Virus record (IMG/VR): IMGVR_UViG_3300027771_001853
Location: 233,624 to 297,623 of that record
Strand: one strand, 5' to 3'
Length of the DNA stretch: 64,000 nt
In this document: in pieces, positions 4,969 to 56,428 of the stretch
How the letters are laid out: each line of letters opens with the position of its first letter
How positions within the stretch are numbered: position 1 is the stretch's first letter
The notes under the pieces: generated by a model
What the model was told of the DNA's origin: nothing
Database searches by the model: none
What the model saw: the letters and a program-made list of their open reading frames with translations, nothing else
Position numbers and translations under genes: made by a program

Positions 4969-4996
4969 AATTTTTAATTTTTTTTATTTTTGGTTA

Positions 4997-6580: not shown

Positions 6581-7306
6581 TTATCTATCTAAAAAGTTGT
6601 TTAACTTCTTCATCATAGTTAAAGCATGTGTATTTGGACCATTAAAATCTGCTGGTATTGGTGGTGGTGTTGCCTCTTCTAAAGTCTCTTCATATTTGTC
6701 TTTGTCTTTTATGTCTTTGAATAGGTAAGCTCCTGGAGTTGATGGTGACGACACTAAATCAAAACATATCAATTCAAAATCATCTTGTACTATATTTTTT
6801 CCTCCTTCACTCTTTAGTGACCCTACACCCCTAGAAGAAATACCTAGAGTAACACCATGTCTTAATAGATTAGCTGCTATATCACCAACACATGAGATAA
6901 TACCCTTAGTGTGGTAAGCTGGTGAGGTTAGTATTTGTAGTTTCCCCATTAATGTGTCCCCGTCCCAAAAAGTCTCCACAACTCTATGGGAACTTCTTTC
7001 TAAGTCCACTAATGACGATTCTGGGTGATTTAATTCGGATAAGGCTCTACCTTGTCCTATTAGTTGTTGGTATTTGTCTACCTCTCTCTTTAATATGTCT
7101 GCTGGGTATATCCTACCATTTCTGTTTTGAACCCCACACTTCTGTAGGACAGCATAAATAAAAACACCTTCAGAATCTTTAAATCCTTTGGTTTCTGTTA
7201 TTATTTTTTTATTTAAATCGTAGTGTGGTGATATGTGTCCCGCATCAATTTCTAGTAGGACTCCTTTACCGATTTCGTTAGCTTCAAGTAATTTATATGT
7301 ACGCAT
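6581..7306 (-). CDS. gp21: prohead protease (gp21-like, peptidase S77)
   Basis: QNRNGRIYP, LSELNHP (His), GISSRGVGS (Ser), FDLVSSPSTPGA. Confidence 0.93.
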   Translation of the reverse strand: MRTYKLLEANEIGKGVLLEIDAGHISPHYDLNKKIITETKGFKDSEGVFIYAVLQKCGVQNRNGRIYPADILKREVDKYQQLIGQGRALSELNHPESSLVDLERSSHRVVETFWDGDTLMGKLQILTSPAYHTKGIISCVGDIAANLLRHGVTLGISSRGVGSLKSEGGKNIVQDDFELICFDLVSSPSTPGAYLFKDIKDKDKYEETLEEATPPPIPADFNGPNTHALTMMKKLNNFLDR

Positions 7307-28529: not shown

Positions 28530-28530
28530 A

Positions 28531-31866: not shown

Positions 31867-31899
31867 AATATATCTTTTAATGATAAATATGCACGATGT

Positions 31900-36724: not shown

Positions 36725-36770
36725 AATAATTATTTTTCTCCTATAAATATGTTTATAACGGTAAAAAAAG

Positions 36771-37364
36771 TTACATATAAGTAGGATTCCCCTTACCTCT
36801 TGTAACTTTACTTTCCCATGGTGCTCCACTTTGTAGTGGATTAGCGTTTGCTCGTGTTAAACCAGTGTCGTGTGGTCCTCCACTTTGTAGTGGGTTCCCT
36901 TTCCCTCTTGTGACCCCTGTTTCCCATTCTGGTGCTCCTGTCCCACCCCCACCACTTGGTGTTGAGGTGTCACTACTCGTTGTATCTAGTCCTCCGTCTA
37001 GGTCTTGTTCAGATAAATCATCTTCATTACTACCCAACCATTCATCCAATAAATCTCCAGCTATTCCATTAACTCTGCCATTTATTTGAATTAGTGTTGG
37101 TTCTTCCTCTTCTATGGTTATTTCCTCCATAGCTTGACTTATAAGGTCTTCCCTAAACTCTTCAATAACTGTATTAATGTTAATTTCTTCACCTAACTTA
37201 GTTTCTAAATCTAGAAAATTGAAAACATCTACACTTATGTCGTCCCCAACAATAGGTGCTTCATCTTCGTATTCAGTACCATCGTATTCGGTATCGTATT
37301 CTTTTAATACTTTCCTTACTAAATTTTCTATGTCGGATTCTGTTAGTTTTACCACCTTTCTCAT
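36771..37364 (-). CDS. KLTE-leader protein with three C-terminal W(E)xxVTRGxxNP repeats
   Basis: MRKVVKLTESDIENLVRKVLKE; WETGVTRGKGNPLQSG / HDTGLTRANANPLQSG / WESKVTRGKGNP. Confidence 0.75.
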   Translation of the reverse strand: MRKVVKLTESDIENLVRKVLKEYDTEYDGTEYEDEAPIVGDDISVDVFNFLDLETKLGEEININTVIEEFREDLISQAMEEITIEEEEPTLIQINGRVNGIAGDLLDEWLGSNEDDLSEQDLDGGLDTTSSDTSTPSGGGGTGAPEWETGVTRGKGNPLQSGGPHDTGLTRANANPLQSGAPWESKVTRGKGNPTYM

Positions 37365-37379
37365 TGTTCTATGTTTATC

Positions 37380-37459
37380 TATAAATACTTTGTAACATAT
37401 TATAAATATTTTCGTATACCCTATTAGTTAATTAAAAAAAACATTATCTTTGTATTATG
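37380..37459. repeat. copy A of an 80-bp bidirectional promoter cassette
   Basis: First 37 nt identical and 68/80 identical without gaps to 47191..47270. Confidence 0.92.
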
Positions 37460-37627
37460 ATTAAAAAAAGTGGGTATAAATTAGTGAGTGTGGGGTTCAG
37501 TGACCCCAGAGGTATAGAAATTGGTCGATTACTCGTTAAAAAACAAGCTATATTATCACACTTTTCTATGAATAAATTCTACTACTGGATAAAAAACGGA
37601 ATAAAATTGTCTAACCTTAAAAAATAA
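37457..37627 (+). CDS. 56-aa hypothetical protein (not in ORF track)
   Basis: MIKKSGYKLVSVGFSDPRGIEIGRLLVKKQAILSHFSMNKFYYWIKNGIKLSNLKK; ATG 4 nt after TATCTTTG. Confidence 0.55.
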   Translation: MIKKSGYKLVSVGFSDPRGIEIGRLLVKKQAILSHFSMNKFYYWIKNGIKLSNLKK

Positions 37628-37632
37628 AAAAA

Positions 37633-38181
37633 ATGAAATATCCTAAACTTGTACTTTTACTTTCACTATTAATAACTTTTACTTCTTGTGAAAAAAATGA
37701 ATTCGATGATTACCCACAACCACCAACCACAGTAGATGTTGATTCTGACAATACTAGTGTCGTAACGGACGATTACCCAAACCTTAGTGGTAAATGGTTA
37801 TTATATGAGGGTATAAGATATACACACACTGAGGGTATGGCCTCTACTGATACCTACGATGTAACAGAATACGATGTAAACGGATACGAAAATGTTTATA
37901 ACTCACCACAAACACCATTAGATAGCGTGTCTGTTAATAACACTGTTTGGGAACTCACTTATAACGATTTGTTAGTTAATTACCAATATAATTTTGTATA
38001 CGTTATAGGTAACTTTAATAATACCGTAGAAATAAACACTGGAGGCACAAAAAGAATATTCACAATCCTAGAGTACGAAAACTTAGGAACTGAGTTAAGA
38101 ATTAAAACTGCTAACCAAGAATGGTTAGATAATGGTGTACCTAAGTACCAGTTTAGTATCTTGAAATTTTATAAGATTTAG
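37633..38181 (+). CDS. lipoprotein, lipocalin-like
   Basis: Signal MKYPKLVLLLSLLITFTS-C followed by EKNEFDD; LSGKWLL motif. Confidence 0.75.
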   Translation: MKYPKLVLLLSLLITFTSCEKNEFDDYPQPPTTVDVDSDNTSVVTDDYPNLSGKWLLYEGIRYTHTEGMASTDTYDVTEYDVNGYENVYNSPQTPLDSVSVNNTVWELTYNDLLVNYQYNFVYVIGNFNNTVEINTGGTKRIFTILEYENLGTELRIKTANQEWLDNGVPKYQFSILKFYKI

Positions 38182-38327
38182 GTATCGTCTCTTTCGAAGT
38201 AGAAATCTTTTCGGTCTTCATCTTCTTCTAAAGTTTCTAATACCCCTAAACATCTTTCTACTAATGCCCAATCTTCTTCTTGTATGGCTGTTTTAAGGTC
38301 GTCTATTAAGTCTGTAATATAATTCAT
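38178..38327 (-). CDS. 49-aa acidic hypothetical protein (not in ORF track)
   Basis: MNYITDLIDDLKTAIQEEDWALVERCLGVLETLEEDEDRKDFYFERDDT. Confidence 0.5.
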   Translation of the reverse strand: MNYITDLIDDLKTAIQEEDWALVERCLGVLETLEEDEDRKDFYFERDDT

Positions 38328-38374
38328 ATTTATTTTTCTCAATATTAAATATAGATTATATTTAAAAAAGTACT

Positions 38375-39442
38375 TTAAATAAGCATACTATTTTTAAAAA
38401 CGTAATATTCTATGAGTGGTTTGAGTATTTTCTTGTCTTCATTTATTGTGGTTCTAATGAAAGATGATTTTGGAAATATGTAAGATTTACGGTCACTACC
38501 GGATTTAACATCCACGTCGTTTTTAAATACTAGTTTTTCACCGTCATACTGTCCACCGTTACCAACAAACACATAAAAATCTGGTCCGTTAGGTGGTTGG
38601 AGGTATGGTTTAGAGTTACCCACTTGTGTTACCACATAGTCCCCATTAACGGCATTATTTACATCACGAAATGGTTTTACTTGAAATCCTTGTGGTACAC
38701 CATCTAATATTTGTGTAATATCTATTCCCTTCTTAACGTCATCCTTATCTCCGTGACACGCACCTATCCATTCTCCACCTCTTGTAGAAATATCCTGTAA
38801 ATATGTTAAAGCTTCGCCCTCTCTAATGTCCCCGTCTACCGTAGTATGTTGTATCATACATAAAATATCAGAGTAGTATTTTCCATCCTCACTAAAAAAG
38901 TCTTTATATGTTGGTGTCTTTATAGTTTTACTTTCTCTTTCTATTTGTTGACTTACCACCCTATCCCCAGGTCTCATATATTGTCCACTAGCTTCCATTT
39001 CTTCCGGACTTAGATTTGGTATGTCAGAAACCACCTCTTCTTCTGTGGTTACTTGGCCAGTAGTTAATGTTTCTCTTAATAAATCTATATCTACCTTATT
39101 GTTATATACCACATTTAAACCTAATGAGTCTAACACATTAAGAATGTAAGCAAAAACATAGAAATGATTATCCACTCTATTTAATATTGACCATGACCTA
39201 TCTTTATTAACCACCCCAAACCTATAGGCTTTATTACCTTTAGCTTCAAGACAAGGAGTAGTGTTGGTCCATCTATCCAATGGTTTATAAATGTTTTCTG
39301 TGAAACCCAGTAAAAGTTTTCCAAAAGCCCTTAGGTTGCCTAAGTTTTTGGCTTTTGTATAATTCCACTTACTACCAGCATTTCTAACAATAGTTCCAGC
39401 GGGACTACAATTTTCTATTCTTTGTTCGTTAATTATCTTCAT
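38375..39442 (-). CDS. protein with C-terminal PD-(D/E)xK-like nuclease motif
   Basis: DDVKKGIDIT...GFQVKPF; short MKIINEQ leader. Confidence 0.55.
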   Translation of the reverse strand: MKIINEQRIENCSPAGTIVRNAGSKWNYTKAKNLGNLRAFGKLLLGFTENIYKPLDRWTNTTPCLEAKGNKAYRFGVVNKDRSWSILNRVDNHFYVFAYILNVLDSLGLNVVYNNKVDIDLLRETLTTGQVTTEEEVVSDIPNLSPEEMEASGQYMRPGDRVVSQQIERESKTIKTPTYKDFFSEDGKYYSDILCMIQHTTVDGDIREGEALTYLQDISTRGGEWIGACHGDKDDVKKGIDITQILDGVPQGFQVKPFRDVNNAVNGDYVVTQVGNSKPYLQPPNGPDFYVFVGNGGQYDGEKLVFKNDVDVKSGSDRKSYIFPKSSFIRTTINEDKKILKPLIEYYVFKNSMLI

Positions 39443-39446
39443 ACGT

Positions 39447-39716
39447 TTAATTACTCAATTTAATCCAAACATCAGCCTCGTCCATAATATCTAAAGTCCT
39501 ACCATTATCCCATTTCACCACATATTGTTCTCCCCAAGGTGTTTTTTGTATGCCAATAACTTTCCCTTCACTATTAGCTGGGACAGCTGTTGGGTCATCC
39601 ATATACAATAACCTAACTCTATCATTTATACTCAATTTTTGATTAACTTCCATCTTGGCAGTTCTTTCACCAATCTCATTTATTAATGTTTGTGTTAGAC
39701 CAAATTTATTCTTCAT
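39447..39716 (-). CDS. DUF4314-like protein
   Basis: DRVRLLYMDDP.AVPANSEGKV.G.......YVVKWDNGRTL. Confidence 0.7.
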   Translation of the reverse strand: MKNKFGLTQTLINEIGERTAKMEVNQKLSINDRVRLLYMDDPTAVPANSEGKVIGIQKTPWGEQYVVKWDNGRTLDIMDEADVWIKLSN

Positions 39717-39775
39717 AGAGCGTTTTACACATAAATAGTTTGATAAGTTGTTTAATATTATTTATCATTGATAAT

Positions 39776-40120
39776 ATGAATAGATATATCTTAATTTCCA
39801 TACTGCTTTTCTTTTTAGCACAAACTATGGTTTGGTTACAATTAAACGGCCAATTCGTGTGGACTTCTTTTCGTAAATACGAATGGGTTTTAATTCTTTT
39901 TGGGTTACCTATTAGTTGGTTGTTTCTAGAAGCTACTAGACATGGTGTAGCTGCTTTTGATGGGTTACTTTGGCCACAAAGATTTATTGCGTTCGCTTGT
40001 GGTATTGTTATTTTTACTTTTTTTACTTGGGTATTTAAGGGTGAAGGTATTAATACTAAAACCCTAATTTCTTTGTGTTTGGCAAGTTGCTTAGCGTTAA
40101 TTCAGATTTTTTGGAAGTAA
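39776..40120 (+). CDS. small multi-pass membrane protein (SMR/EamA-like size)
   Basis: Four hydrophobic segments; start reassigned to MNRYIL. Confidence 0.7.
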   Translation: MNRYILISILLFFLAQTMVWLQLNGQFVWTSFRKYEWVLILFGLPISWLFLEATRHGVAAFDGLLWPQRFIAFACGIVIFTFFTWVFKGEGINTKTLISLCLASCLALIQIFWK

Positions 40121-40122
40121 TT

Positions 40123-40503
40123 CTATCTTAATCGACCCGAAAATCCTCCAGCTGAACCAGCTGATGTAGCTTCCTTAGTCTCAACCTCATCCTCATCGTC
40201 TCTTGTTATAGAAACTTCACCATTTTCAGATTCAAAGGCTGCTTTACTATTATTAACTTGATGGTTTTTATATTCAGTAACATCTAACTCATTGTTAAGG
40301 GTAATACCTCCACCATCCACAGCAAGACCATGGTTATCTTTATATTGTTTTAACATCTCAGTAACTTTTTCAGCGGAGTTAATTCTTTGGTTTTCGTGAA
40401 TATGCAATTCTCTAATTCTATCTTCTTCAGATTTATTATTAGTAAAATTATTAGAGTTTTCTTTATATGTATTGAACTTAGGTCCTGGTATTATTGCTGT
40501 CAT
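40123..40503 (-). CDS. hypothetical protein
   Basis: 126 aa, ends KEATSAGSAGGFSGRLR; upstream TATTTAT. Confidence 0.65.
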   Translation of the reverse strand: MTAIIPGPKFNTYKENSNNFTNNKSEEDRIRELHIHENQRINSAEKVTEMLKQYKDNHGLAVDGGGITLNNELDVTEYKNHQVNNSKAAFESENGEVSITRDDEDEVETKEATSAGSAGGFSGRLR

Positions 40504-40601
40504 AGTATATTCTTTTTAAATAAATATACGTGAAGTATAATATAGTCTTTATTGTCTTTTCAAATTGTTGACTTAGATTACAATATAGAGTATAACATAT
40601 A

Positions 40602-40760
40602 ATGTATAAACAAGTTGTGGTTAAAGGTTATTTTAGAAAAAACGGTACCTGGGTTGGGGAACATACCCGTAGAATAAAAGCATCATCTAAAATTGTGTTT
40701 GTTACCCTTAAAGACATTAAAACTGAAAATCCAAATCAACTAAGTATTAATTTTGAATAG
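40602..40760 (+). CDS. 52-aa basic protein with VxGYxRKNGTxVxxHxR motif (not in ORF track)
   Basis: MYKQVVVKGYFRKNGTWVGEHTRRIKASSKIVFVTLKDIKTENPNQLSINFE. Confidence 0.6.
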   Translation: MYKQVVVKGYFRKNGTWVGEHTRRIKASSKIVFVTLKDIKTENPNQLSINFE

Positions 40761-40786
40761 TTAAAAAAATTCACTACCCTTACACT

Positions 40787-41110
40787 ATGATACCACACGT
40801 AGACGAAAAATATCTATCGACAGGAAAATTAATATCAACCCCATGGAGGTATGTGGATACTGAATACTCAAAACCGTACAATGTAATGTTTTTGGTACAG
40901 GAAAGAAGGAATGTACACGACATGGGTAAAACAGATGTTAGTTATTGTGAATTATTAGGTTACAAAAATTTTAATAAATTCAAAAAGGTAATACACGAAC
41001 AAATGAAATGGTACGAACCTAAATTGTGTGAATTACATAAGAAACATTACCCGACTATAAATAAAATAAACGACATCATATATAAATTAAGTCCTTGGAG
41101 ATGGCAATAG
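40787..41110 (+). CDS. hypothetical protein
   Basis: 107-aa ORF. Confidence 0.6.
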   Translation: MIPHVDEKYLSTGKLISTPWRYVDTEYSKPYNVMFLVQERRNVHDMGKTDVSYCELLGYKNFNKFKKVIHEQMKWYEPKLCELHKKHYPTINKINDIIYKLSPWRWQ

Positions 41111-41171
41111 TTAAGTTTTTAACAGTCCTATTGTTTTTATATTTTTTGTATATTTGTTTAACTAAAGAAGA

Positions 41172-41426
41172 TTAGTCCCAGAATATTATCTTACCCAATA
41201 TACCTATAAGGACAATCCAAATAGACCATAATGTTTTTTGACTAAACTTTCTAAACGCTGTATTCTTATTGACTCTTGCTATCGCACCATCGTCAGGGTT
41301 AAGTAATTGTTTCTTAATCATAGTTAAATCGTCTTGCATTTTGGACTGTCCGTCCCTTAGATGTTGTACATCTTTTTTTACAAGTTTTATCTCACTAGCT
41401 AGATTTTCGTTTGTTAATCCGGGCAT
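41172..41426 (-). CDS. coiled-coil plus C-terminal TM protein, XhlA/holin-like
   Basis: Heptad N-half and LWSIWIVLIGILGKIIF tail. Confidence 0.5.
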   Translation of the reverse strand: MPGLTNENLASEIKLVKKDVQHLRDGQSKMQDDLTMIKKQLLNPDDGAIARVNKNTAFRKFSQKTLWSIWIVLIGILGKIIFWD

Positions 41427-41450
41427 TAATTTTTTTTTAATAAATACTCC

Positions 41451-42146
41451 TTACCTTGGTCTTTGGTTAGATTTATTACGAGTATTTGTCTTATTTATCC
41501 TATTTGTGTTTGTTTTTTTAACATTAGTACGAGTATTGGTTTTAATAACCTTTGTATTGTTGGACCGATTACTGTTAGTTTTTACTCTAATAGGTATTAT
41601 TTTATTATCAATATTTCTAATCGTTGTTCTATTGGGGGTAAAAGTTACCTTAGTTCTGTTTGTTTTAACTCTAACATTGCCTCTCCATTTGGTAGGTACA
41701 TTTGAGTTACTTATAACTTTTACTCCTGTGGTATGAACATTGTTGTGGTTATATGTTAAGTTTGTTTTATTGTTGTGTCTCCAATTACCTCTTGGTCTGT
41801 AGACATACCCACTATTACCTAAGTGACAATGTACGTGTGTGGTAATGTTGTAATAATAAGAAGGTGTGTGGTTGTAGTAATACCACCAAGGGTAGATATG
41901 TCTATACCCGTAGTAGTAATAGTACCCACTGTGGTATCCCCAATATGGTGAATCGTTATAATAATAAAGTCCAGCTATAGGTGCGTAATTAACGTTAAAA
42001 TAGTCTAGTTCATCCTCACCATGGTAAGAGGTACCACCATAACTTCCTCCATAGACAAGACAACCAGATAATAAAGTCACTAAACATGTTGTTATAAAGA
42101 ATACCACTAATACTCTCGATATTGTTATTTCATCCCAATTTTTCAT
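41451..42146 (-). CDS. putative lipoprotein with Tyr-rich core and N/T/R-rich tail
   Basis: LLSG-C lipobox, YYYYGYRHIYPWWYYY, low-complexity basic C-terminus. Confidence 0.65.
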   Translation of the reverse strand: MKNWDEITISRVLVVFFITTCLVTLLSGCLVYGGSYGGTSYHGEDELDYFNVNYAPIAGLYYYNDSPYWGYHSGYYYYYGYRHIYPWWYYYNHTPSYYYNITTHVHCHLGNSGYVYRPRGNWRHNNKTNLTYNHNNVHTTGVKVISNSNVPTKWRGNVRVKTNRTKVTFTPNRTTIRNIDNKIIPIRVKTNSNRSNNTKVIKTNTRTNVKKTNTNRINKTNTRNKSNQRPR

Positions 42147-42151
42147 TTTAT

Positions 42152-42415
42152 TTATATTTTAATTAATTTTATTAATTGTTCTGGAGTGTCGAAATCCCTG
42201 TCTACCGCTAAGAATTTAAGTTCCTTGGTGTTACGATTTACCTCAACTATGGTTGGGGTGTACTTAATTTTTTCTTGTTCCCTTACGGATTCCCACTCCA
42301 TCCTATTTAAAGATACGTCTTTTACGGTGTAAGGTACATTATTACTGTCTAAAACCTTTTTTAGTTCATCACAGAATTCGCACCCTTCTTGACTATATAA
42401 GAAATATTTAATCAT
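42152..42415 (-). CDS. glutaredoxin-like protein
   Basis: LYSQEGCEFCDELK (CxxC), KYTPTIV. Confidence 0.85.
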   Translation of the reverse strand: MIKYFLYSQEGCEFCDELKKVLDSNNVPYTVKDVSLNRMEWESVREQEKIKYTPTIVEVNRNTKELKFLAVDRDFDTPEQLIKLIKI

Positions 42416-42496
42416 TGTTGGTCTTTCTAGTTTTATTTGTTACATTTAATTAATAAATAGATTCTATTAATATAATATTAATTAAAAAAGTTTAAA

Positions 42497-42703
42497 ATGC
42501 AAAATAAAAACACAAAGAAGGATAAATTTGTTAGGGATTTAACTCACGGTAATATAGGTGGTGTTTGTGCTGGAATAGCTAATTACTTCGGTAGTAATGT
42601 TACCTTAGTAAGGGTATTATTCATTATGTCATTTTTCATACCTTCCATACCAATAATATTAATATACCTAATTTTATGTATTGTAACACCTGAAAAATAC
42701 TAA
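42497..42703 (+). CDS. pspC: PspC domain protein
   Basis: RDLTHGNIGGVCAGIANYFG....LVRVLF......PIILIYLILCIVTP. Confidence 0.88.
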   Translation: MQNKNTKKDKFVRDLTHGNIGGVCAGIANYFGSNVTLVRVLFIMSFFIPSIPIILIYLILCIVTPEKY

Positions 42704-42704
42704 T

Positions 42705-42929
42705 ATGGGGTTCAATAAAAAACACCTACTCAATGAAAGTGTACTAAAGTTATTAAAGACCGGTGGTTTGGATAGTGTTAGGGAGTGGTTAAAAAAAGCT
42801 GACTCTGTAATCGCTGAAAGTGGGGTATCATCTGAAGTGCTAGACTTGTTAGAGGGTGAAAATTTAACACCAGAAAAAATACAAGATAAAGTAAAAAAAA
42901 TTATAGATAAGGGTAGGGACTTAAACTAA
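42705..42929 (+). CDS. hypothetical protein
   Basis: 74-aa ORF 1 nt after pspC-like gene. Confidence 0.65.
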   Translation: MGFNKKHLLNESVLKLLKTGGLDSVREWLKKADSVIAESGVSSEVLDLLEGENLTPEKIQDKVKKIIDKGRDLN

Positions 42930-44036
42930 AACAACCTCCACTTTACAGAATGTAGATGTGAACTCTATCGTCTCGGAATAAAACTCCCACATCATTTCTA
43001 TAACCTCTAACTGTTCCTCACTATAATTTCTAAATGAAGTTAATTTATTTCTTGCACTTTCTGGAAACAATTCTTGTATAAATGGTTTAACCTCATCTAG
43101 GTTGTAGATAACTTCCATGTTAACTGGTAACCCCAAGTCACCATCTTTATCTATAAGAACCCTAATATCCCAACAAGCATAACCATGTTCACCAAAGTTT
43201 TCGGACTCATCATATAGGTAATCATAATCAACTGGTTCTATTTTAAATTTTAATCTTTCAAAACCCATTTCACTAGTGTCTAACCAATTCATATTCGCGA
43301 ACTTAGTATTCTTAATACCACCAATCCATTCAAGATAGAGGAGAGGGTAAACTACATCCCCAATATTACGAAAATCAGTAAATTCTTCATCAACTCCCTC
43401 ATCACTTATATTAAATAATTTTAAAACACCGAAATCGGCTTTACCAAGTTTATCCCACTGTTTAAAAATTTGTTTTTTATATTCTGGTTTAACAAACTCG
43501 TTAAAATACGCGTCGTCCCCTCCTCCTTCAGCAAATTTGTTTGGGTATTCACCACTATCCTGTTGTTCATTAATACCCACCTTATTCACCTCTTGTTCGA
43601 AGTACGGGGAACGCATAATGGTTGTGTAAGCTTTACGAGTTAAATATTCAAAAAAGTGATTTACATTACCGGTGGACATTTCTTCACCGTTTTCTTGCAT
43701 ATACAACATAGTGAATCTAGTCATAATGTCTCTCATTTTTTGTGAATTATCATGAATATATTTCACTTCTGGGTACCTTTCTTCTAAAAACATCTCGTAG
43801 TCAAAATCTTCACCCTCTTCATCCATAGCATTTAAAATTTCCGCCGCTAGTTCTCGTCTAAGGACATTTTTTCCGTCTGTAAAGAAAGGTGTTAAATTTG
43901 TGGTAATTGTATTATATTTCCCCCAAGTTCTAAGTATGTTAAACCATTTAGCTATTTCTTTTTTATCGGAACCAGTTAAATGTTTTAAAATTTCTCGGTT
44001 GGACCACAGTATTTCTATTTCTTGAGGTAATGCCAT
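42921..44036 (-). CDS. acidic hypothetical protein
   Basis: Start reassigned to MALPQEIE; upstream TATTTATA at 44048-44055; internal INEQQ site. Confidence 0.7.
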   Translation of the reverse strand: MALPQEIEILWSNREILKHLTGSDKKEIAKWFNILRTWGKYNTITTNLTPFFTDGKNVLRRELAAEILNAMDEEGEDFDYEMFLEERYPEVKYIHDNSQKMRDIMTRFTMLYMQENGEEMSTGNVNHFFEYLTRKAYTTIMRSPYFEQEVNKVGINEQQDSGEYPNKFAEGGGDDAYFNEFVKPEYKKQIFKQWDKLGKADFGVLKLFNISDEGVDEEFTDFRNIGDVVYPLLYLEWIGGIKNTKFANMNWLDTSEMGFERLKFKIEPVDYDYLYDESENFGEHGYACWDIRVLIDKDGDLGLPVNMEVIYNLDEVKPFIQELFPESARNKLTSFRNYSEEQLEVIEMMWEFYSETIEFTSTFCKVEVVLV

Positions 44037-44058
44037 ATATTTGTTTATATAAATATAC

Positions 44059-44081
44059 AAAAAAAAGGGACAGAAGTCCCT
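44059..44081 (-). terminator. intrinsic terminator
   Basis: Minus strand AGGGAC-TTCT-GTCCCT followed by T7. Confidence 0.75.
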
Positions 44082-44138
44082 AATTTATTTTATGTTTGGG
44101 TATAACCCTGTACTAAGTATTTTAGCTGTTAGAATTAA

Positions 44139-44384
44139 CTAGCTAATTTCTAGTATGTCTGAGTACGGACCTTTTCTTGTGTCTAGTAAAAATTTGTCAC
44201 CGTTTTGTGTCTGACCTGTCAAATAGTAAGTGAATGCAAATTTACTGGCTCTTATGTTATTTTCATTAATTGCCCCTTCTGACATGTTCCAAACTGAACC
44301 TCTTGTGTTGTAGTCATGACCGTCAGTATTTCCAGCTGGTGCCGCTTGTGGTGGAAATTGTCCGTAGTTGTTATTTAATCCCAT
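44139..44384 (-). CDS. hypothetical protein
   Basis: Start reassigned to MGLNNNYG; upstream TATTTAT. Confidence 0.6.
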   Translation of the reverse strand: MGLNNNYGQFPPQAAPAGNTDGHDYNTRGSVWNMSEGAINENNIRASKFAFTYYLTGQTQNGDKFLLDTRKGPYSDILEIS

Positions 44385-44454
44385 AGTATTTGTTTTTTCT
44401 TTTATAATAAATATCTCCAACTATTAAAAAGTTTGTGGTTGTTATTTACTTTTT

Positions 44455-44751
44455 TTATATTTCTTCCTCTTCTTCGTAATCATACTCATGAGTTACTGTG
44501 GTGTGTGTTGGGTTTTGGTCCTCCTCAGTTGGTTCTTCACCACCTTTAGGTGAGAAGTTTTCTGCTGCGGTAAACCCAAGTCCTGCCATTACTATCCACT
44601 GTAACGATTGAAATAGGTCACTTTCAATTGTAAAATCCCAAAATAAATTTGCTGTGTAACCAATTAACATAAATAATAGACATATAAATGTCACAAATCT
44701 CTTACTAGAGACTTTACCCTCACTACTTAACATATTTTTAAAGAAATTCAT
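44455..44751 (-). CDS. two-TM membrane protein, holin-like
   Basis: MNFFKNMLSSEGKVSSKRFVTFICLLFMLIG...LQWIVMAGLGFTAAE, acidic tail. Confidence 0.55.
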   Translation of the reverse strand: MNFFKNMLSSEGKVSSKRFVTFICLLFMLIGYTANLFWDFTIESDLFQSLQWIVMAGLGFTAAENFSPKGGEEPTEEDQNPTHTTVTHEYDYEEEEEI

Positions 44752-44821
44752 AGTATTTGTTTTTATTATAAATAGCCGTATACTTAAGAAAATAACATTA
44801 TTATAACAAAAAATTAAAAAA

Positions 44822-45001
44822 ATGGCAGTAGAAATTAACATTATGGAAAATGGACCAATTTTGGTCAAAGGAGAAACCATTGTAACAAAAGGTGGTGAAA
44901 AAATAACAGTGGGTGAAAATTATGCGTTGTGTAGGTGTGGACAATCTAAGAAACAACCAATGTGCGACGGAGCTCATAAGGCTTGTGGTTTTAAAGGATA
45001 A
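44822..45001 (+). CDS. CDGSH iron-sulfur (2Fe-2S) domain protein (not in ORF track)
   Basis: MAVEINIMENGPILVKGETIVTKGGEKITVGENYALCRCGQSKKQPMCDGAHKACGFKG; C-x-C-x2-S-x3-P-x-C-D-G-A-H motif complete. Confidence 0.92.
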   Translation: MAVEINIMENGPILVKGETIVTKGGEKITVGENYALCRCGQSKKQPMCDGAHKACGFKG

Positions 45002-45006
45002 AACAA

Positions 45007-45369
45007 ATGAAAACGATTATCTGTGATATAGACGGTACTTTAGTTTCATACAAAAAAGACACTAAGGGTATTGTTACAACACCTCACGACATATTACCGG
45101 GGGTTTCAAAACACCTTAATAAGTGGGAAAATCAAGGTTGTAAAATAATTCTTATTACCGGTAGGAGGGAAAACTTAAGAAAAGTAACTGAGGAAGAATT
45201 AACTAATCTAGGTCTTCCTTTTGATTTACTAATCATGGGTTGTGCTGATTCTGGTAGGGTATTAATAAATGATGAAGGTGGTAAAGTAAAAGCTCACGCG
45301 GTATCTTTAAAACGTGATGAAGGATTTAATGACTATGATTGGTCTGAAGTTGGTTTAAGTAAGGTATGA
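45007..45369 (+). CDS. HAD-superfamily phosphatase (PseT phosphatase-like)
   Basis: IICDIDGTL (DxDGT), ILITGRRE, RVLINDE. Confidence 0.85.
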   Translation: MKTIICDIDGTLVSYKKDTKGIVTTPHDILPGVSKHLNKWENQGCKIILITGRRENLRKVTEEELTNLGLPFDLLIMGCADSGRVLINDEGGKVKAHAVSLKRDEGFNDYDWSEVGLSKV

Positions 45370-45635
45370 AAAAAGAAACAGTGAGAAATATAGAGTTGTT
45401 GGTAAAGGATATCGTGGGTGTTGTGACATTCAAAGAAATCAAAACCCGCATAAATGACGGTAGAATATCGTCACATTTAGAATTACGGTTATGGGGGTTA
45501 TCGAGTATATACACCGACCCAACCTACCTAAAGATTATTTACGAGGCCTTTAAAATTAAAAAATATACTTGGTTAAAGTACCTTAACCCCAGATATTGGG
45601 TACTGTTGTTGGGTTGTTTCTTTGTATTGGTCTAG
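45366..45635 (+). CDS. hypothetical protein
   Basis: 89 aa, start overlaps HAD stop. Confidence 0.55.
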   Translation: MKKETVRNIELLVKDIVGVVTFKEIKTRINDGRISSHLELRLWGLSSIYTDPTYLKIIYEAFKIKKYTWLKYLNPRYWVLLLGCFFVLV

Positions 45636-45786
45636 CTGGTTCTACTAAGATGTTAGTCCCTCTTGTCGTATCTTCTTTAACACTACCCATTCTAGATTTT
45701 AATAAATCTAAATCTTGGGGGGACAATCCTCCTTGTTTTGAGTCTATAAAACCTTTTAACCAATTGTAAAAATCTCTGTGATTCAT
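45583..45786 (-). CDS. hypothetical protein
   Basis: 67 aa MNHRDFYNWLKGFID; follows 45793..46095. Confidence 0.6.
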   Translation of the reverse strand: MNHRDFYNWLKGFIDSKQGGLSPQDLDLLKSRMGSVKEDTTRGTNILVEPARPIQRNNPTTVPNIWG

Positions 45787-45792
45787 ATATTA

Positions 45793-46095
45793 TTATTTAG
45801 TAATCTTCTTTCTGTTCCCATTGTTAGATTTTTCGAAAACTTTCCTAGCTTTACGACTTTCTCTAATTCTTTTAAAATCCTCCTTTTTAACCACATTAAC
45901 AGTATTTTCCTTTTTTGACTCTGTAACTTTCGGTTTTTGTGTTTTATTTTCTGCGGTAACTTTATCAACTATTTTATATAAATCATTCTCATTTAATTTA
46001 ATGGTATCGGACTGTCTTTCTTTTTTTATCCGTTTAACTGTTTGTTCTATAAAGTCTATTAATTCTGTTTCTGTAAGTTGTAATTTCTTTTTCAT
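45793..46095 (-). CDS. protein made of two KLxE leader-like motifs
   Basis: KLQLTETELIDFIEQTV and IKLNENDLYKIVDKVTAE. Confidence 0.7.
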   Translation of the reverse strand: MKKKLQLTETELIDFIEQTVKRIKKERQSDTIKLNENDLYKIVDKVTAENKTQKPKVTESKKENTVNVVKKEDFKRIRESRKARKVFEKSNNGNRKKITK

Positions 46096-46138
46096 ATTTA
46101 AGTTTTTTGATTATTTTAGTTGTTAATACCTAATTCCA

Positions 46139-46741
46139 CTAAGCACCAGCATTTTTAATTTTTCTACGTATATCACTATAGTATGGTTTCACACCTACTG
46201 GTCTTAAAGTTCCATCAGCTGATTCACCCAATCCACCTTTTAAACCTTTGGTTACCATTGTATTTAATTTATCCGTACCCGATTCTAATGCCCACGCATA
46301 TGTTGGGGTATGACCCTGACCATTGTGACATTCAATCTCACCACCACAACATTGTAACATACCGTTATCCATATAAGTGTCATTTAATAATGCCCATTGA
46401 CCTGGACCTTGTTCATCTTCACAGAATTGTATTCTTTCCGTTACTGGTGTATTAGCACCCGCCCCGAATAACGCTCCTTCATCCGATTTACGTTCAAAAA
46501 TTGGTTGTCCGTTTAATGTCTGACTTATTTTCATAAATGTTAAACCACTGACCAATAACCCCATTACCTGACTAGGTATGTTTAAAGCTGTGGATGTTGT
46601 TGCTGTAGAGTAGTCTACATTTTTTGCTATTGGTTCTGCCTGTAGTCCACCCGCCATTGATGGTGCTACACCACCTGGTATAACTGGTGATGTAAACATA
46701 CCATATGTGTGTGTTCCTCCCGGATTGTTAATATTTCCCAT
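46139..46741 (-). CDS. hypothetical Gly-rich protein
   Basis: 200 aa; upstream TATTTATA at 46755-46762. Confidence 0.7.
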   Translation of the reverse strand: MGNINNPGGTHTYGMFTSPVIPGGVAPSMAGGLQAEPIAKNVDYSTATTSTALNIPSQVMGLLVSGLTFMKISQTLNGQPIFERKSDEGALFGAGANTPVTERIQFCEDEQGPGQWALLNDTYMDNGMLQCCGGEIECHNGQGHTPTYAWALESGTDKLNTMVTKGLKGGLGESADGTLRPVGVKPYYSDIRRKIKNAGA

Positions 46742-46772
46742 AATTTTGTTTAATTATAAATATCTTTATTTT

Positions 46773-47186
46773 CTATTTATTCCCACCGACCTTAAAGCCT
46801 ATAGGTCCTTCTTCTTTGTCTGGTAAACCATCAAGAATATCAATCAATTCCTGTACTAGTGAATGTAGTTCACCACCTTCAGCTAACAGTTGGTACATTC
46901 TTTGTACTAACACATCGTCCTCGTATAGTGATTTTTTATTTACTTGGTCTTTTATATGTCCAGATACCACATCTATAAAAGAATCTATATCATCTTTTAA
47001 TTCACCACTATAACTTTTGGTGAACCCCATAGCTTCTTCCACGTCTTCTTTTTTTTCTGATTCTGGTTTACATGCCTTACTTTTACCACACCAGTACATC
47101 CCTTTAGGACACTTATTTTTCCCCCCTTCTGAGACAACTTTTTCTATAAGTTTTACTAATTCTGTTTCTGTTAATTTAAATTTCAT
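46773..47186 (-). CDS. KLTE-leader protein with small Cys motif
   Basis: MKFKLTETELVKLIEKVVSEG then KCPKGMYWCGKSKACKP; C-terminal PIGFK. Confidence 0.72.
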   Translation of the reverse strand: MKFKLTETELVKLIEKVVSEGGKNKCPKGMYWCGKSKACKPESEKKEDVEEAMGFTKSYSGELKDDIDSFIDVVSGHIKDQVNKKSLYEDDVLVQRMYQLLAEGGELHSLVQELIDILDGLPDKEEGPIGFKVGGNK

Positions 47187-47190
47187 ACTT

Positions 47191-47270
47191 TATAAATACT
47201 TTGTAACATATTATAAATATTTTCGTACACCATATTAGTAACCAATAAAAATTAATATCTTCGTAATATG
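47191..47270. repeat. copy B of the 80-bp bidirectional promoter cassette
   Basis: See 37380..37459; ends at the ATG of the first CAP gene. Confidence 0.92.
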
Positions 47271-47867
47271 AAAAAAATAACACTAACATTCATCCTAATC
47301 CTACTTTCAGTACTTGGGTTTTCCCAGTATAGTGACTTTGAGTTGGCGGTGGCTGATGGGGTGAACGAATATAGAAACTCACAGGGTTTGTCAGACTTAG
47401 AATTTTTACCTTCATTAAGTGACAAACTGGATTTCTTACTGGAGAGGGTTGTTGATGCTAATTCGTTGTGGGGACCTGATGGGGGACACTCTTCAAATTT
47501 TAAATATTCTGGTAAACTAATTTCTGAACAGATTAAAGAAAATACCGTACCCAATAAAGAAATAGAAACGTTATACAAAAGTATAAAATTTAAATATGAG
47601 TCAGTAAAAATGATACGAGGTGAAGGAGAGACAACGTTTAACTCTATTTCACATTTAGCTGGTGAAAATTTATTTCGTACAAATTATGATATGGACCCAA
47701 AAAGGTTTGTGGTTAACTGGATAAACTCACCAACACACGAACATATAATGACTTTAGATAAACATAGAGAAAACGTAGTCCCTATTGGTGTTGTTAATGT
47801 GATTTACGATGGTCAATGGTGTTACGTTACATTCATAATAATATTATTAGAAAAAGAAGACCTTTAA
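47268..47867 (+). CDS. secreted CAP (SCP) domain protein
   Basis: Signal peptide MKKITLTFILILLSVLGFSQ; VNEYRNSQGL, HS, AGENL, WINSPTH. Confidence 0.8.
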   Translation: MKKITLTFILILLSVLGFSQYSDFELAVADGVNEYRNSQGLSDLEFLPSLSDKLDFLLERVVDANSLWGPDGGHSSNFKYSGKLISEQIKENTVPNKEIETLYKSIKFKYESVKMIRGEGETTFNSISHLAGENLFRTNYDMDPKRFVVNWINSPTHEHIMTLDKHRENVVPIGVVNVIYDGQWCYVTFIIILLEKEDL

Positions 47868-47902
47868 AGAAACAAAACACAACCTACAACGTATACTATA
47901 AT

Positions 47903-48382
47903 ATGAAGAAACTAATCACATTATTATCCCTAATCTTAACACTAAACTCTTACGGTCAAACCGTTTTAGATTCACTTGTTTTTAAAAGACTTAACGAGTA
48001 CCGTATAGAGAACGGTAAAGTAGCCTTAACTTTAGATACCTTAGTATATAAAGCGGCTTACCACCATTCTAAATACTTACACGACAATGGTTGGGATTGG
48101 GGGCACAGAGAAGATTCTTTGGTTAAACCTTGGGATAGATTAAAAGCACAGGGATTATTTTTTTGGTCGGCTGGTGAGAACATAGCTACGTTTACCGTAA
48201 ATTTAGTTTCACAAGATGGGTGGGTGGATATGGAAGCTTTATCAACACAAGTTTTAACTCAGTGGATTGGTTCACCTTCACATCATTGGTTAATGTTAAA
48301 CGAAAAGATTAACCAGGGAGCTATAGCTGTATACATTGGTTCTGGAAAGGTATTTGTAACACTAAACGCGATAAAGCAATAA
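47903..48382 (+). CDS. secreted CAP (SCP) domain protein, second copy
   Basis: Signal MKKLITLLSLILTLNSYGQ; LNEYRIENG, AAYHHSKYL, GHRE, AGENIA, WIGSPSH. Confidence 0.85.
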   Translation: MKKLITLLSLILTLNSYGQTVLDSLVFKRLNEYRIENGKVALTLDTLVYKAAYHHSKYLHDNGWDWGHREDSLVKPWDRLKAQGLFFWSAGENIATFTVNLVSQDGWVDMEALSTQVLTQWIGSPSHHWLMLNEKINQGAIAVYIGSGKVFVTLNAIKQ

Positions 48383-48389
48383 AAAACTC

Positions 48390-51369: not shown

Positions 51370-51590
51370 ATACTAATAAATATAACCTTTCTTTGGTTTA
51401 TACGTATAAAGAGTTACTTGGCCTCTTATGTTTTTATTCTGATTTTAATTTTTTTGGTTTCAACACTAACTTCAGATACCTCGGCCTTAATAATTGTAGA
51501 TATAAAATGTTTTATTTCTTTTAATCCCATGAACTAATAATAACTAACAATCTACTTTCGTAAATGAAATTAATTCCTTATCTTTGTACT

Positions 51591-56030: not shown

Positions 56031-56068
56031 AATTAGTTTATGTCAATTAATTTCATTATCTTTGTATT

Positions 56069-56428
56069 ATGAAGTTAACAAAACAACAATTAAATAAAAA
56101 ACTAAGGTCAAAAATACTAACACTACAAGCACGGAAAAAAAATCTAAAGGATTTACGAATTATGGTGGTTAGGGCAAGAAACGTAGATGTAACAAATGTT
56201 TTGTACCGTCACACTTCTGTAACTGTAAAAATATCAGGAGAGGTTAAATCCAGTAACGACAAATGGCTTCCTTTACAACTTTATAGACCAAACCAAATTA
56301 GAAAATTTTTACGTAGGAAGGATGTCGGTATAGTTGAATCTGTAAGTAAGTGGGTTAGATTGTGGGGTTTTGATAGTGATGTGTCCCTAGAGACGATAGA
56401 CATTGTTAATAAGGTTTTACCTAATTAA
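56069..56428 (+). CDS. basic hypothetical protein
   Basis: ATG 4 nt after TATCTTTG (56057-56064). Confidence 0.65.
   Translation: MKLTKQQLNKKLRSKILTLQARKKNLKDLRIMVVRARNVDVTNVLYRHTSVTVKISGEVKSSNDKWLPLQLYRPNQIRKFLRRKDVGIVESVSKWVRLWGFDSDVSLETIDIVNKVLPN

What the first reader, a model, noticed from the sequence alone, without database searches (positions are those of the whole stretch)
37380..47270. Duplicated 80-bp bidirectional promoter cassette bracketing a 10-kb accessory block
Seen: 37380..37459 and 47191..47270 align without gaps (first 37 nt identical, 68/80 overall). Each has two leftward TATTTATA motifs 21 nt apart and, at the same offset, a rightward TATCTT(T/C)G followed 4 nt later by ATG. 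Each drives a KLTE-leader gene leftward and exported-protein genes rightward (small ORF plus lipoprotein; two CAP proteins). Established: repeated promoter elements mediate gene-cassette shuffling in some T4-like phages. Inference: a portable late/early switch unit and recombination point; recombination between the copies would excise or amplify the 9.8-kb block between them.
Basis: partly seen in the sequence, partly recalled or inferred. Interest (0 to 1): 0.75.

Follow-up and report, generated by a model that had tools for sequence, protein, structure and literature searches.

The report
Duplicated two-way promoter region in phage
Two old copies of an 80-base, two-way gene-control region sit 9.8 kb apart in a giant marine phage; they are real and conserved in related phages, but nothing shows them acting as a mobile cassette that cuts out or amplifies the genes between them.

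Summary
The repeat is real: 68 of 80 bases match without gaps, the first 37 are identical, and there are only two copies in the 297.6-kb genome.

The genome is an uncultured marine jumbo myophage, distantly T4-like. Its promoter and translation signals point to a Bacteroidota host.

- **Leftward boxes.** Each copy has two TATTTATA boxes pointing left. This is the phage's main promoter-like motif: TATTTAT lies upstream of 75 of 296 genes (14.8-fold enriched), and sense outnumbers antisense 25 to 4.
- **Rightward box.** Each copy has a host sigma-A-type -7 box exactly 4 nt before the ATG. That geometry predicts a leaderless mRNA, and the module recurs at three more genes.
- **Flanking genes.** They are unrelated between copies, except for the short "KLTE" start of the two left-hand proteins.
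- **Relatives.** About six related metagenomic phages (~80% identity) carry A-type and B-type copies at the same two sites. Of the 24 genes between them, 23 are kept in order. None of 13 cassette instances has a recombinant junction.
- **Concerted change.** The few variable bases of the 40-nt core tend to change together in both copies of a genome. This suggests gene conversion or co-evolution with a shared factor.

The divergent-promoter reading is supported by motif statistics, not by mapped transcript starts. The reading as a portable recombination unit is not supported. Interest is modest.

The parts
37365..37456 (.). Copy A: 92-nt divergent intergenic control region between the left KLTE-leader gene and the right 56-aa ORF
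   Evidence: It is 38/40 invariant across four genomes, against a 59% mean for the block.
37380..37416 (-). Copy A core: 37 nt identical to copy B. It holds two leftward TATTTATA boxes (37380-37387, 37401-37408) and is itself an imperfect 21-nt tandem.
37445..37459 (+). Copy A rightward host-type -7 box TATCTTTG, then 4 nt, then ATG. This is the leaderless geometry. The conserved ATTAGT lies at 37423-37428, and there is no canonical TTTG at -33.
   Evidence: box position -12 to -5 in Flavobacterium from PMC9723704
47187..47267 (.). Copy B: 81-nt divergent intergenic control region
47191..47227 (-). Copy B core with leftward TATTTATA boxes at 47191-47198 and 47212-47219. The proximal box is only 4 nt from the ATG of the left gene.
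47256..47270 (+). Copy B rightward box TATCTTCG, then 4 nt, then ATG. It has one mismatch to TAnnTTTG. Relatives carry TATCTTTG or TATATTTG here, and one relative (L007) has a clean 12-nt deletion of the box.
36771..37364 (-). Left gene of copy A: 197-aa acidic protein with the KLTE leader (MRKVVKLTESDIENLV...). Its C-terminus has three TRGKGNPLQSG-like repeats.
   Evidence: no Pfam or PHROG match
46773..47186 (-). Left gene of copy B: 137-aa protein with the KLTE leader (MKFKLTETELVKLIEKV...)
   Evidence: homologues only in related marine phage contigs
37457..38181 (+). Right genes of copy A: conserved 56-aa ORF (37457-37627) and a 182-aa lipoprotein (37633-38181; signal peptide ending ...TFTSC)
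   Evidence: 81-89% amino-acid identity in relatives
47268..48382 (+). Right genes of copy B: two secreted CAP/SCP-domain proteins (47268-47867; about 47903-48382)
37457..47186 (.). The 9.7-kb block between the copies. It has 24 small genes on both strands, including glutaredoxin-like, PspC, CDGSH, HAD phosphatase and DUF4314 genes and one more KLTE-leader gene at 45793-46095.
56054..56071 (+). Third site with the same rightward module (TATCTTTGTATTATG, preceded by ATTAGTT). A fourth lies at 51576-51593.
6581..7306 (-). T4 gp21-family prohead protease (Peptidase_S77). It is the candidate enzyme that would cut the KLTE leader after Glu.

Best explanation
The two 80-90-nt segments are ancient paralogous copies of a back-to-back (divergent) promoter region in an uncultured marine jumbo myophage. 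The phage is distantly T4-like and very probably infects Bacteroidota.

Left half: two copies of the phage's own promoter box, TATTTATA, 21 nt apart. They are inferred to be read by host RNA polymerase carrying a phage-encoded sigma factor. They drive a gene whose product begins with the short KLTE leader. That leader is probably a head-targeting and processing signal cut after Glu by the phage's gp21-type protease.

Right half: a host sigma-A-type -7 box (TAnnTTTG) placed exactly 4 nt before the ATG. Transcription should then start on the A of the start codon and give a leaderless mRNA for exported proteins (small ORF plus lipoprotein; two CAP proteins). These are presumably made from the start of infection.

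Evolution: the module was copied once, long before the known relatives diverged, and both copies have stayed in place under purifying selection. Their 40-nt left core is kept nearly identical within each genome, by short gene-conversion tracts or by co-evolution with one binding factor. It is not an active mobile element, and the 9.8-kb block between the copies is stable.

Shown: the repeat, the motif statistics and orientation, conservation and synteny, and the presence of the sigma and protease genes. Inferred: which polymerase form reads which box, transcript starts and timing, leader function, and gene conversion.
For: - **Repeat.** It is real and there are only two copies.
- **TATTTAT(A) box.** It is the top enriched upstream 7-mer, found before 75 of 296 genes (14.8-fold), mostly 12-30 nt before the ATG. 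In 105 co-directional intergenic regions sense outnumbers antisense 25 to 4. It precedes the tail sheath, baseplate wedge, adaptor, protease and scaffold-like genes. Intergenic boxes are invariant in four genomes, while coding occurrences are not.
- **Polymerase.** The phage encodes a 264-aa sigma-70-family protein with regions 2 and 4, plus a weaker region-2-only candidate. No RNA polymerase beta subunit was found. The sigma gene lies behind a host-type TTTG-N19-TACTTTTG promoter.
- **Host-type boxes.** Of 48 TAnnTTTGTA sites, 15 lie in the 4.4% of the genome that is intergenic, most with TTTG or TTG 19-20 nt upstream.
- **Leaderless module.** TATCTT(T/C)GTAnnATG starts five genes. In Flavobacterium the sigma-A box occupies -12 to -5 (PMC9723704), which puts +1 on the A of the ATG.
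- **Host phylum.** Only 23 of 296 genes have a Shine-Dalgarno-like motif, and upstream regions are A-rich at -3 and at -11 to -14.
- **Flanking proteins.** They show no similarity between the copies.
- **Relatives.** A-type and B-type copies sit at syntenic sites in rel/L010, L039, L043 and L050/L053, and in the partial contigs L007, L009, L011, L013 and L014. 23 of 24 block genes are collinear.
- **Core variants change together.** The two bases after TATAAATAC read, as copy A/copy B: window TT/TT; TARA824 CT/CT (if its two contigs are one genome); L043 CT/TT; rel, L039 and L050 AC/AT. L043 alone has A to C at 37397 and at the matching base 47208, in both copies.
- **Leader.** It is N-terminus-specific: 7 N-termini score at least 10 bits against 0 of 2,617 internal windows. 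The major capsid protein, the scaffold-like protein and the protease begin with a similar ...LLE(S/A).
Against: - No transcript start, timing or polymerase specificity has been measured, and no RNA run was listed.
- The cassette lacks a canonical TTTG at -33. It has TATT/TTAG instead.
- The window's own copy B box (TATCTTCG) departs from the consensus, and one relative (L007) has deleted the box entirely. The rightward promoter may therefore be weak or dispensable at copy B.
- The TATTTATA box also precedes a DnaB-type helicase gene, so it is not a purely 'late' signal.
- The cassette is no more conserved than several other intergenic stretches in the block.
- The concerted-change argument rests on three variable sites. 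For one genome it also assumes that two contigs from one sample belong together.
- The + strand of the core also carries TAnnTT(C)G-like strings (TATTTTCGTA at 37407-37416). A second rightward start cannot be excluded.
Confidence: 0.6

Rival explanations
1. One reading: the cassette is a portable regulatory unit and an active recombination site, like the PeSL cassettes of T4-type phages. Crossovers between the two direct copies would excise or amplify the 9.8-kb block and shuffle accessory genes.
For: The same 80 nt lies between two unrelated gene pairs, so it moved or was copied at least once. The 37 identical bases are near the homology length that T4-type recombination needs (less than 50 bp, quoted in PMC2839356). 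Coordinated core changes fit exchange between the copies. The phage is distantly T4-like.
Against: There are only two copies in 297.6 kb. Both are fixed at the same sites with type-specific right halves in all relatives. 23 of 24 genes between them are conserved in order. The one presence/absence gene (glutaredoxin-like, 42152-42415) is not next to a cassette. 0 of 13 cassette instances have recombinant flanks. There is no stem-loop or terminator. Rare recombinants could not be looked for, because only assembled unitigs were available and they break at the repeat.
Confidence: 0.12
2. The identical 37-40-nt core is mainly an operator. A dedicated DNA-binding regulator (or a special activator of the phage sigma) would bind both sites and co-regulate the two loci. 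The coordinated base changes would then reflect co-evolution of sites and protein rather than gene conversion.
For: The spacer between the boxes is invariant, whereas TATTTATA boxes elsewhere in the genome have no conserved flanks. Changes appear in both copies of a genome. The spacer is an imperfect palindrome (read directly).
Against: No regulator has been identified. A two-site regulon is unusual. In AT-rich DNA imperfect palindromes are common. The A-copy base that differs from B in three genomes became B-like in the three derived genomes, which is what conversion predicts.
Confidence: 0.2
3. The boxes are T4-style late promoters (TATAAATA) read on the + strand. They would drive the rightward exported-protein genes through a 50-70-nt leader, and the leftward genes would be served from elsewhere.
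For: TATAAATA is the T4 late promoter consensus (general knowledge). The phage has a T4-like head module and sheath.
Against: Genome-wide, the motif faces its gene as TATTTATA: 25 to 4 in co-directional spacers for the 8-mer, and 50 to 8 for the 7-mer. It lies 12-30 nt from the ATG of the gene it faces.
Confidence: 0.04
4. The match is chance similarity of AT-rich low-complexity spacers.
For: The genome is 34.7% G+C and its spacers are A/T-rich.
Against: There were 0 matches in 100 shuffles for the 37-mer. Both copies are conserved in about six related genomes.
Confidence: 0.01

Closest known systems
PeSL cassettes (promoter-early stem-loop) of T4-type phages RB49 and phi1 (Arbiol et al. 2010, PMC2839356; Comeau et al. 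2014, PMC4122927)
   Same: Both are roughly 100-bp conserved intergenic regulatory repeats that carry a host-type promoter, lie in the accessory part of a T4-like genome, and are direct repeats able in principle to recombine.
   Different: PeSLs are many per genome, one-directional, include a G+C-rich stem-loop terminator and a Shine-Dalgarno site, and coincide with insertions, deletions and replacements between near-identical phages. They also give detectable mini-circles. Here there are two copies, the region is bidirectional, it has no stem-loop, it is not linked to gene-content differences, and circles were not testable.
Internal-protein (ip) genes of T-even phages with their shared capsid targeting sequence (PMC12373910, PMC9026906, PMC3012670)
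   Same: Otherwise unrelated small proteins share only a roughly 10-20-residue N-terminal leader. The leader contains hydrophobic-x-Glu, as gp21-type proteases require. The phage encodes a gp21-family protease. The genes cluster in a variable genome region behind the phage's own promoter box.
   Different: No sequence similarity to the T4 leader was tested or is claimed. Packaging and cleavage are not shown. The conserved part of the KLTE leader continues about 12 residues past the Glu. The host phylum and the promoter motifs are different.
Bacteroidota sigma-A promoters (-33 TTTG / -7 TAnnTTTG), as mapped in Flavobacterium psychrophilum (PMC9723704) and Bacteroides thetaiotaomicron (PMC7366714)
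   Same: The right half carries TATCTTTG. The same genome has about a dozen intergenic TAnnTTTGTA boxes with TTTG or TTG 19-20 nt upstream.
   Different: The cassette copies lack the canonical -33 element. The box sits so that the mRNA would be leaderless, a class that makes up only 5.5% of F. psychrophilum mRNAs.
T5 llp-oad arrangement: an early lipoprotein gene divergent from a late virion gene (recalled from memory, not tested here)
   Same: An early exported lipoprotein gene lies back-to-back with a phage-promoter-driven virion-type gene.
   Different: There is no homology, and any function in superinfection exclusion is pure conjecture here.

Membership tests
PeSL (promoter-early stem-loop) cassette | Host sigma-70-type early promoter inside the conserved element | tested here: inconclusive
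   A host-type (Bacteroidota sigma-A) -7 box is present and conserved. There is no canonical -33 element, and activity was not measured.
PeSL (promoter-early stem-loop) cassette | Adjacent stem-loop acting as terminator or attenuator | tested here: not met
   Neither strand of either copy folds better than shuffled sequence (z from +0.1 to +1.8). No terminator-like site lies in either cassette.
PeSL (promoter-early stem-loop) cassette | Many copies clustered in hyperplastic regions | tested here: not met
   There are two copies in 297,623 bp. Only the short rightward promoter-plus-ATG module recurs, at three more genes.
PeSL (promoter-early stem-loop) cassette | Coincides with insertions, deletions or replacements between relatives | tested here: not met
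   23 of 24 genes between the copies are collinear in four genomes, and the single indel gene is not next to a cassette. The caveat is that these relatives are about 80% identical, not the 95% or more of the RB49/phi1 pair.
PeSL (promoter-early stem-loop) cassette | Mini-circles or recombinant junctions formed between copies | not testable with these tools
   Only assembled unitigs were served, and they end at the 37-nt repeat. 0 of 13 assembled instances are recombinant.
T4-type capsid-targeting leader (Ip-like cargo proteins) | Short N-terminal leader shared by otherwise unrelated proteins | tested here: met
   The leader profile scores at least 10 bits on 7 N-termini and on 0 of 2,617 internal windows, though six of the seven are seed sequences. 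BLASTP finds nothing else in common between the two left-gene proteins.
T4-type capsid-targeting leader (Ip-like cargo proteins) | Leader carries the prohead-protease motif (hydrophobic-x-Glu), and the phage encodes a gp21-family protease | tested here: met
   L-T-E, I-K-E or V-T-E lies at residues 5-10 in all members. Peptidase_S77 scores 90 bits at window 6581-7306. The major capsid protein, the scaffold-like protein and the protease start with ...LLE(S/A). The cleavage logo is taken from PMC9026906 and PMC5694885.
T4-type capsid-targeting leader (Ip-like cargo proteins) | Protein is packaged in the head and the leader is removed | not testable with these tools
   This needs virion mass spectrometry, and the phage is uncultured.
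Bacteroidota sigma-A promoter | -7 box TAnnTTTG | tested here: met
   Copy A has TATCTTTG in all six A-type sequences. Copy B has TATCTTTG or TATATTTG in relatives and TATCTTCG in the window.
Bacteroidota sigma-A promoter | -33 TTTG about 19 nt upstream | tested here: not met
   At 19 nt upstream the sequence is TATT, and TTAG lies at 17 nt (read). Other host-type promoters in this genome do have TTTG or TTG at 19-20 nt.
Bacteroidota sigma-A promoter | Transcript start 4-5 nt after the box | not testable with these tools
   No RNA run was listed.
T4 late promoter (TATAAATA facing the gene) | Motif reads TATAAATA in the direction of transcription | tested here: not met
   Genome-wide the motif faces genes as TATTTATA, 25 to 4.

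The most novel reading that the evidence does not exclude
The left half of the cassette plus the KLTE leader may be a 'plug-in' module: phage promoter plus head-targeting and cleavage leader. It would load a diversified set of about 8-10 cargo proteins into the capsid of a Bacteroidota jumbo phage for injection. This would be the functional counterpart of the T-even Ip/CTS system in a very distant lineage. At two loci the module is paired back-to-back with leaderless, host-polymerase-driven genes for exported proteins, and the two control regions are kept in step by gene conversion.
Probability: 0.3. Interest if true: 0.55.

Novelty: new variant of a known kind. Interest (0 to 1): 0.35.

Why it matters
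Taken as proposed, a mobile promoter cassette bracketing an excisable 10-kb block, it would have extended PeSL-type modular shuffling to phages of marine Bacteroidota. The evidence does not support that.

What remains is useful but modest.
- **Promoter grammar.** It gives a first sequence-level promoter grammar for an uncultured jumbo-phage clade: a phage box TATTTATA, host-type TAnnTTTG boxes, and a recurrent leaderless arrangement.
- **Concerted evolution.** It is a clean small example of two regulatory repeats 9.8 kb apart evolving in concert.
- **Candidate cargo proteins.** It gives a candidate head-targeting leader that marks likely injected proteins, which in T-even phages are anti-defence factors.

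Each of these can be tested with a reporter assay, a metatranscriptome or virion proteomics.

Tried and rejected
- **Phage collection.** Megablast of 36000-48500 against 50,697 phage records found no match.
- **Viral-contig pattern scans.** Three exact-pattern scans were run. The first was too strict and found nothing. The other two found only one relative.
- **RNA runs.** None was listed, so transcript starts are untested.
- **Laying reads.** Contigs of four DNA runs were laid on 34500-40300. Logan unitigs end at the 37-nt repeat. The 'loose ends' at 37380 and 37428 are simply the flanks of copy B. The single 501-nt 'joint' at 36130-36632 has only 21 nt on one side, in one run. This says nothing either way about recombinants. 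The 37-nt shared unitig did not show doubled depth (60 against 45-54 in X1; 31 against 31-33 in X2). I leave that unexplained, because the tool warns that depth is not copy number.
- **E. coli-type promoter scan.** It found 51 sites against 53 expected, so it is uninformative for this host.
- **Folding.** Neither strand of either cassette has structure beyond shuffled sequence.
- **Pfam and PHROGs on flanking genes.** Nothing was found for the KLTE proteins, the 56-aa ORF or the lipoprotein.
- **Paralogy of flanking genes.** I asked whether the flanking genes are diverged paralogues, which would mean a duplicated gene pair. BLASTP gives no support beyond the leader.
- **Exceptional conservation.** I asked whether the cassette is unusually conserved. 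It is in the top class but shares that class with other intergenic stretches.
- **Not attempted.** No complex prediction of protease with leader was run, because I do not claim a demonstrated interaction.

Full report
**1.

- Positions 37380-37459 and 47191-47270 match at 68 of 80 without gaps, and the first 37 nt are identical. Similarity runs to about 90 nt (83%).
- The 37-mer never occurs in shuffled sequence.
- A search of the whole record finds exactly two copies.

**2. What the genome is**

- The window is the last 64 kb of a 297,623-bp IMG/VR viral record, 93% complete and 34.7% G+C.
- It is a myophage with T4-family parts:
  - a gp18-type tail sheath and baseplate wedge proteins;
  - a gp23-family major capsid protein;
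  - a gp21-family prohead protease;
  - a B-family DNA polymerase.
- No cultured phage is close. The best sheath hits are 28-34% identical and include Flavobacterium phages.
- Only 23 of 296 genes have a Shine-Dalgarno-like motif, and upstream regions are A-rich at -3 and at -11 to -14. About a dozen intergenic TAnnTTTGTA boxes have TTTG or TTG 19-20 nt upstream. This is the promoter and translation grammar of Bacteroidota (PMC9723704, PMC6847099).
- Near-identical DNA is present in 20 or more marine, sediment and sponge metagenome runs.

**3. The left half**

- TATTTAT is the most enriched upstream 7-mer. It lies before 75 of 296 genes (14.8-fold), mostly 12-30 nt before the ATG.
- In spacers between co-directional genes the motif faces the downstream gene as TATTTATA 25 times and as its complement 4 times.
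- Box-bearing genes include the tail sheath, a baseplate wedge subunit, a head-tail adaptor, the protease and the scaffold-like protein. They also include a DnaB-type helicase, so I call it the phage's own (middle/late) promoter box rather than strictly late.
- The phage encodes a sigma-70-family protein with regions 2 and 4 and a second, region-2-only candidate. It has no RNA polymerase beta subunit.
- The sigma gene sits behind a host-type promoter. That fits a cascade of host sigma-A, then phage sigma, then TATTTATA. This last step is inference.
- In copy B the proximal box is 4 nt from the ATG. In copy A it is 15 nt away. The distal boxes lie 21 nt further upstream.

**4. The right half**

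- TATCTTTG (copy A) and TATCTTCG (copy B), then 4 nt, then ATG.
- In Flavobacterium psychrophilum the sigma-A box lies at -12 to -5, and leaderless mRNAs make up 5.5% of the total. With that geometry +1 falls on the A of the ATG.
- The 15-nt module TATCTT(T/C)GTAnnATG starts five genes in this genome: window 37457, 47268, 51591 and 56069, and genome 46802 on the minus strand. By base composition about 0.04 would be expected (my calculation).
- The module is conserved in relatives.
- Weak points:
  - the cassettes have no canonical -33 TTTG;
  - the window's copy B has one mismatch in the box;
  - one relative (L007) has a clean 12-nt deletion of the box.

**5. What was duplicated**

- The proteins on the two left sides share only their first 20 or so residues. 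The proteins on the right sides share nothing.
- So the unit is the control region plus the leader, not a gene pair.

**6. Relatives**

- Protein-guided and pattern searches recovered collinear relatives at about 75-87% nucleotide identity:
  - rel/L010 (128 kb);
  - L039 (262-kb TARA scaffold, whose cassette sequences match the partial contigs L011 and L009);
  - L043 (302 kb);
  - L050/L053 (28.5 kb);
  - the partial contigs L007, L013 and L014.
- Every genome that spans the region has an A-type and a B-type copy 9.7-10.1 kb apart.
- The right halves are type-specific in all genomes (A...TTAATTAAAAAAAA...; B...AAYCAATAAAAA...). The duplication therefore predates the clade.
- Of the 24 block genes, 23 are present in the same order in rel, L039 and L043. 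Only the glutaredoxin-like gene is missing, in L039 and L043.
- All 13 cassette instances have parental flanks.
- Across four genomes the cassette is 38/40 invariant against a block mean of 59%. Several other intergenic stretches are equally conserved.

**7. Concerted change in the core**

The 40-nt core varies at only three positions. s1 and s2 are the two bases after TATAAATAC. s3 is 37397 in copy A and the matching base 47208 in copy B.

| Genome | Copy A (s1 s2) | Copy B (s1 s2) | s3 (both copies) |
|---|---|---|---|
| rel, L039, L050 | AC | AT | A |
| window | TT | TT | A |
| TARA_R110000824 (L014 + L007) | CT | CT | A |
| L043 | CT | TT | C |

- rel and L039 lie on opposite sides of the block tree ((rel,L043),(win,L039)). 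AC/AT is therefore the likely ancestral state.
- The three derived genomes each changed both copies in parallel. Each time, the A-specific C at s2 became the B-type T.
- Independent evolution needs about 11 substitutions confined to three sites. Short B-to-A conversion tracts, or co-evolution with one binding factor, need far fewer.
- This is suggestive, not proven. It rests on three sites, and for one genome it assumes that two contigs from one sample belong together.

**8. The KLTE leader**

- A profile of the leader scores at least 10 bits on 7 N-termini and on none of 2,617 internal 30-residue windows. Six of the seven are the seed sequences, so this count is partly circular.
- The clear members are window 36771-37364, 45793-46095, 46773-47186, 48390-49661 and 60288-60566, and genome 45228-45650.
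- Weaker members are window 33615-34403, 59808-60266 and 60577-60978.
- All carry (L/I/V)-x-E at residues 5-10.
- The major capsid protein (MGALLES...), the scaffold-like acidic protein (MSNKSLLES...) and the protease (MRTYKLLEA...) begin in a similar way.
- gp21-type proteases cut after Glu in a short motif. The T-even internal proteins share only an N-terminal leader that directs packaging (PMC9026906, PMC5694885, PMC12373910, PMC3012670).
- I therefore think the KLTE proteins are head-packaged cargo. This is inference only.
- In L050 the homologue of the 100-aa KLTE protein is 376 aa long and has an annexin domain. The cargo part behind the leader does vary.

**9. Comparison with PeSLs**

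- PeSLs combine a strong host-type promoter with a stem-loop terminator. They are numerous, coincide with gene gain and loss between close relatives, and form mini-circles (PMC2839356).
- Here the stem-loop, the copy number and the link to indels were all tested and not met. Circles could not be tested.
- The region may resemble a PeSL in carrying its own promoter, but it is not one.

**10. Verdict**

This is a real, conserved, duplicated divergent control region. It is a regulatory paralogue pair rather than a mobile cassette. The interesting side results are the promoter grammar, the leaderless module, the concerted core evolution and a candidate capsid-targeting leader. None of the promoter or leader functions has been measured.

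Noticed in passing
window 32903-33312 (+): A phage-encoded tmRNA gene: Rfam RF00023, 89.6 bits against a gathering score of 47, full-length model match. ARAGORN reported nothing in the window.
   Followed up: partly
window 37457, 47268, 51591, 56069; genome G000 46802 (-): A recurrent 15-nt module, TATCTT(T/C)GTAnnATG, puts a host-type -7 box exactly 4 nt before the start codon of five genes. It is conserved in relatives and predicts leaderless mRNAs. My first ORF call for 51564-51971 probably starts 27 nt too early; 51591 fits the module.
   Followed up: partly
window 3130-7306 (-): A T4-order head module: gp21-family protease (6581-7306), an acidic repeat-rich scaffold-like protein (4997-6478) and a gp23-family major capsid protein (3130-4968). 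All three begin with ...LLE(S/A), resembling the KLTE leader.
   Followed up: partly
G000 85993-86787 (-) and about 212380-213078 (-), outside the window: A phage sigma-70-family gene (264 aa, regions 2 and 4) is apparently co-transcribed with a 195-aa gene behind a host-type TTTG-N19-TACTTTTG promoter. A second 232-aa protein has only a weak region-2 match and may be a gp55-like factor.
   Followed up: partly
window 33615-34403, 36771-37364, 45793-46095, 46773-47186, 48390-49661, 59808-60266, 60288-60566, 60577-60978 (all -); G000 45228-45650 (-): A family of otherwise unrelated small proteins shares an N-terminal leader, M-x(1-6)-(K/Q)-(L/I/V)-(T/K/S)-E-x-(E/D)-L-x-x-(L/I)-(I/V). They are concentrated in the last 30 kb of the genome.
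   Followed up: partly
L050 11149-12279 versus window 45793-46095: In one relative the 100-aa KLTE-leader protein is replaced by a 376-aa version with the same first 50 or so residues and an added annexin-domain C-terminus.
   Followed up: no
L007 about 1290-1300 (copy B of a TARA relative): A clean 12-nt deletion removes the -7 box (TATCTTTGTAAT) but keeps the ATG of the CAP gene. In that lineage the CAP genes must be expressed in another way or not at all.
   Followed up: no
window 42152-42415 (-): The glutaredoxin-like gene is present in the window and in rel but absent from L039 and L043. It is the only presence/absence difference among the 24 block genes. L039 has an extra gene of about 430 nt between the homologues of 44760 and 44822.
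   Followed up: partly
window 36771-37364 (-), C-terminal third: The copy-A left protein ends in three tandem TRGKGNPLQSG(G/A)P-like repeats after a very acidic middle part. No family match was found.
   Followed up: no
window 41451-42146 (-): A 231-aa membrane-anchored protein has an extreme Tyr/Gly-rich stretch (YYYYYGY...) followed by an Asn/Thr/Lys/Arg-rich tail. It is the least conserved block gene, at 51-55% identity.
   Followed up: no
window 25300-31900 (-): Two very large proteins (1,808 and 1,111 aa) contain many internal degenerate repeats (families D2, D4, D5, D9, D11 and D13). They may be fibre or adhesin proteins. The 1,111-aa gene has a TATTTATA box.
   Followed up: no
window 37380-37416 in runs X1 and X2: The 37-nt unitig shared by both copies did not show the doubled k-mer depth expected for a two-copy repeat: 60 against 45-54 in X1, and 31 against 31-33 in X2. 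This is unexplained and may be coverage bias in very A/T-rich sequence.
   Followed up: no
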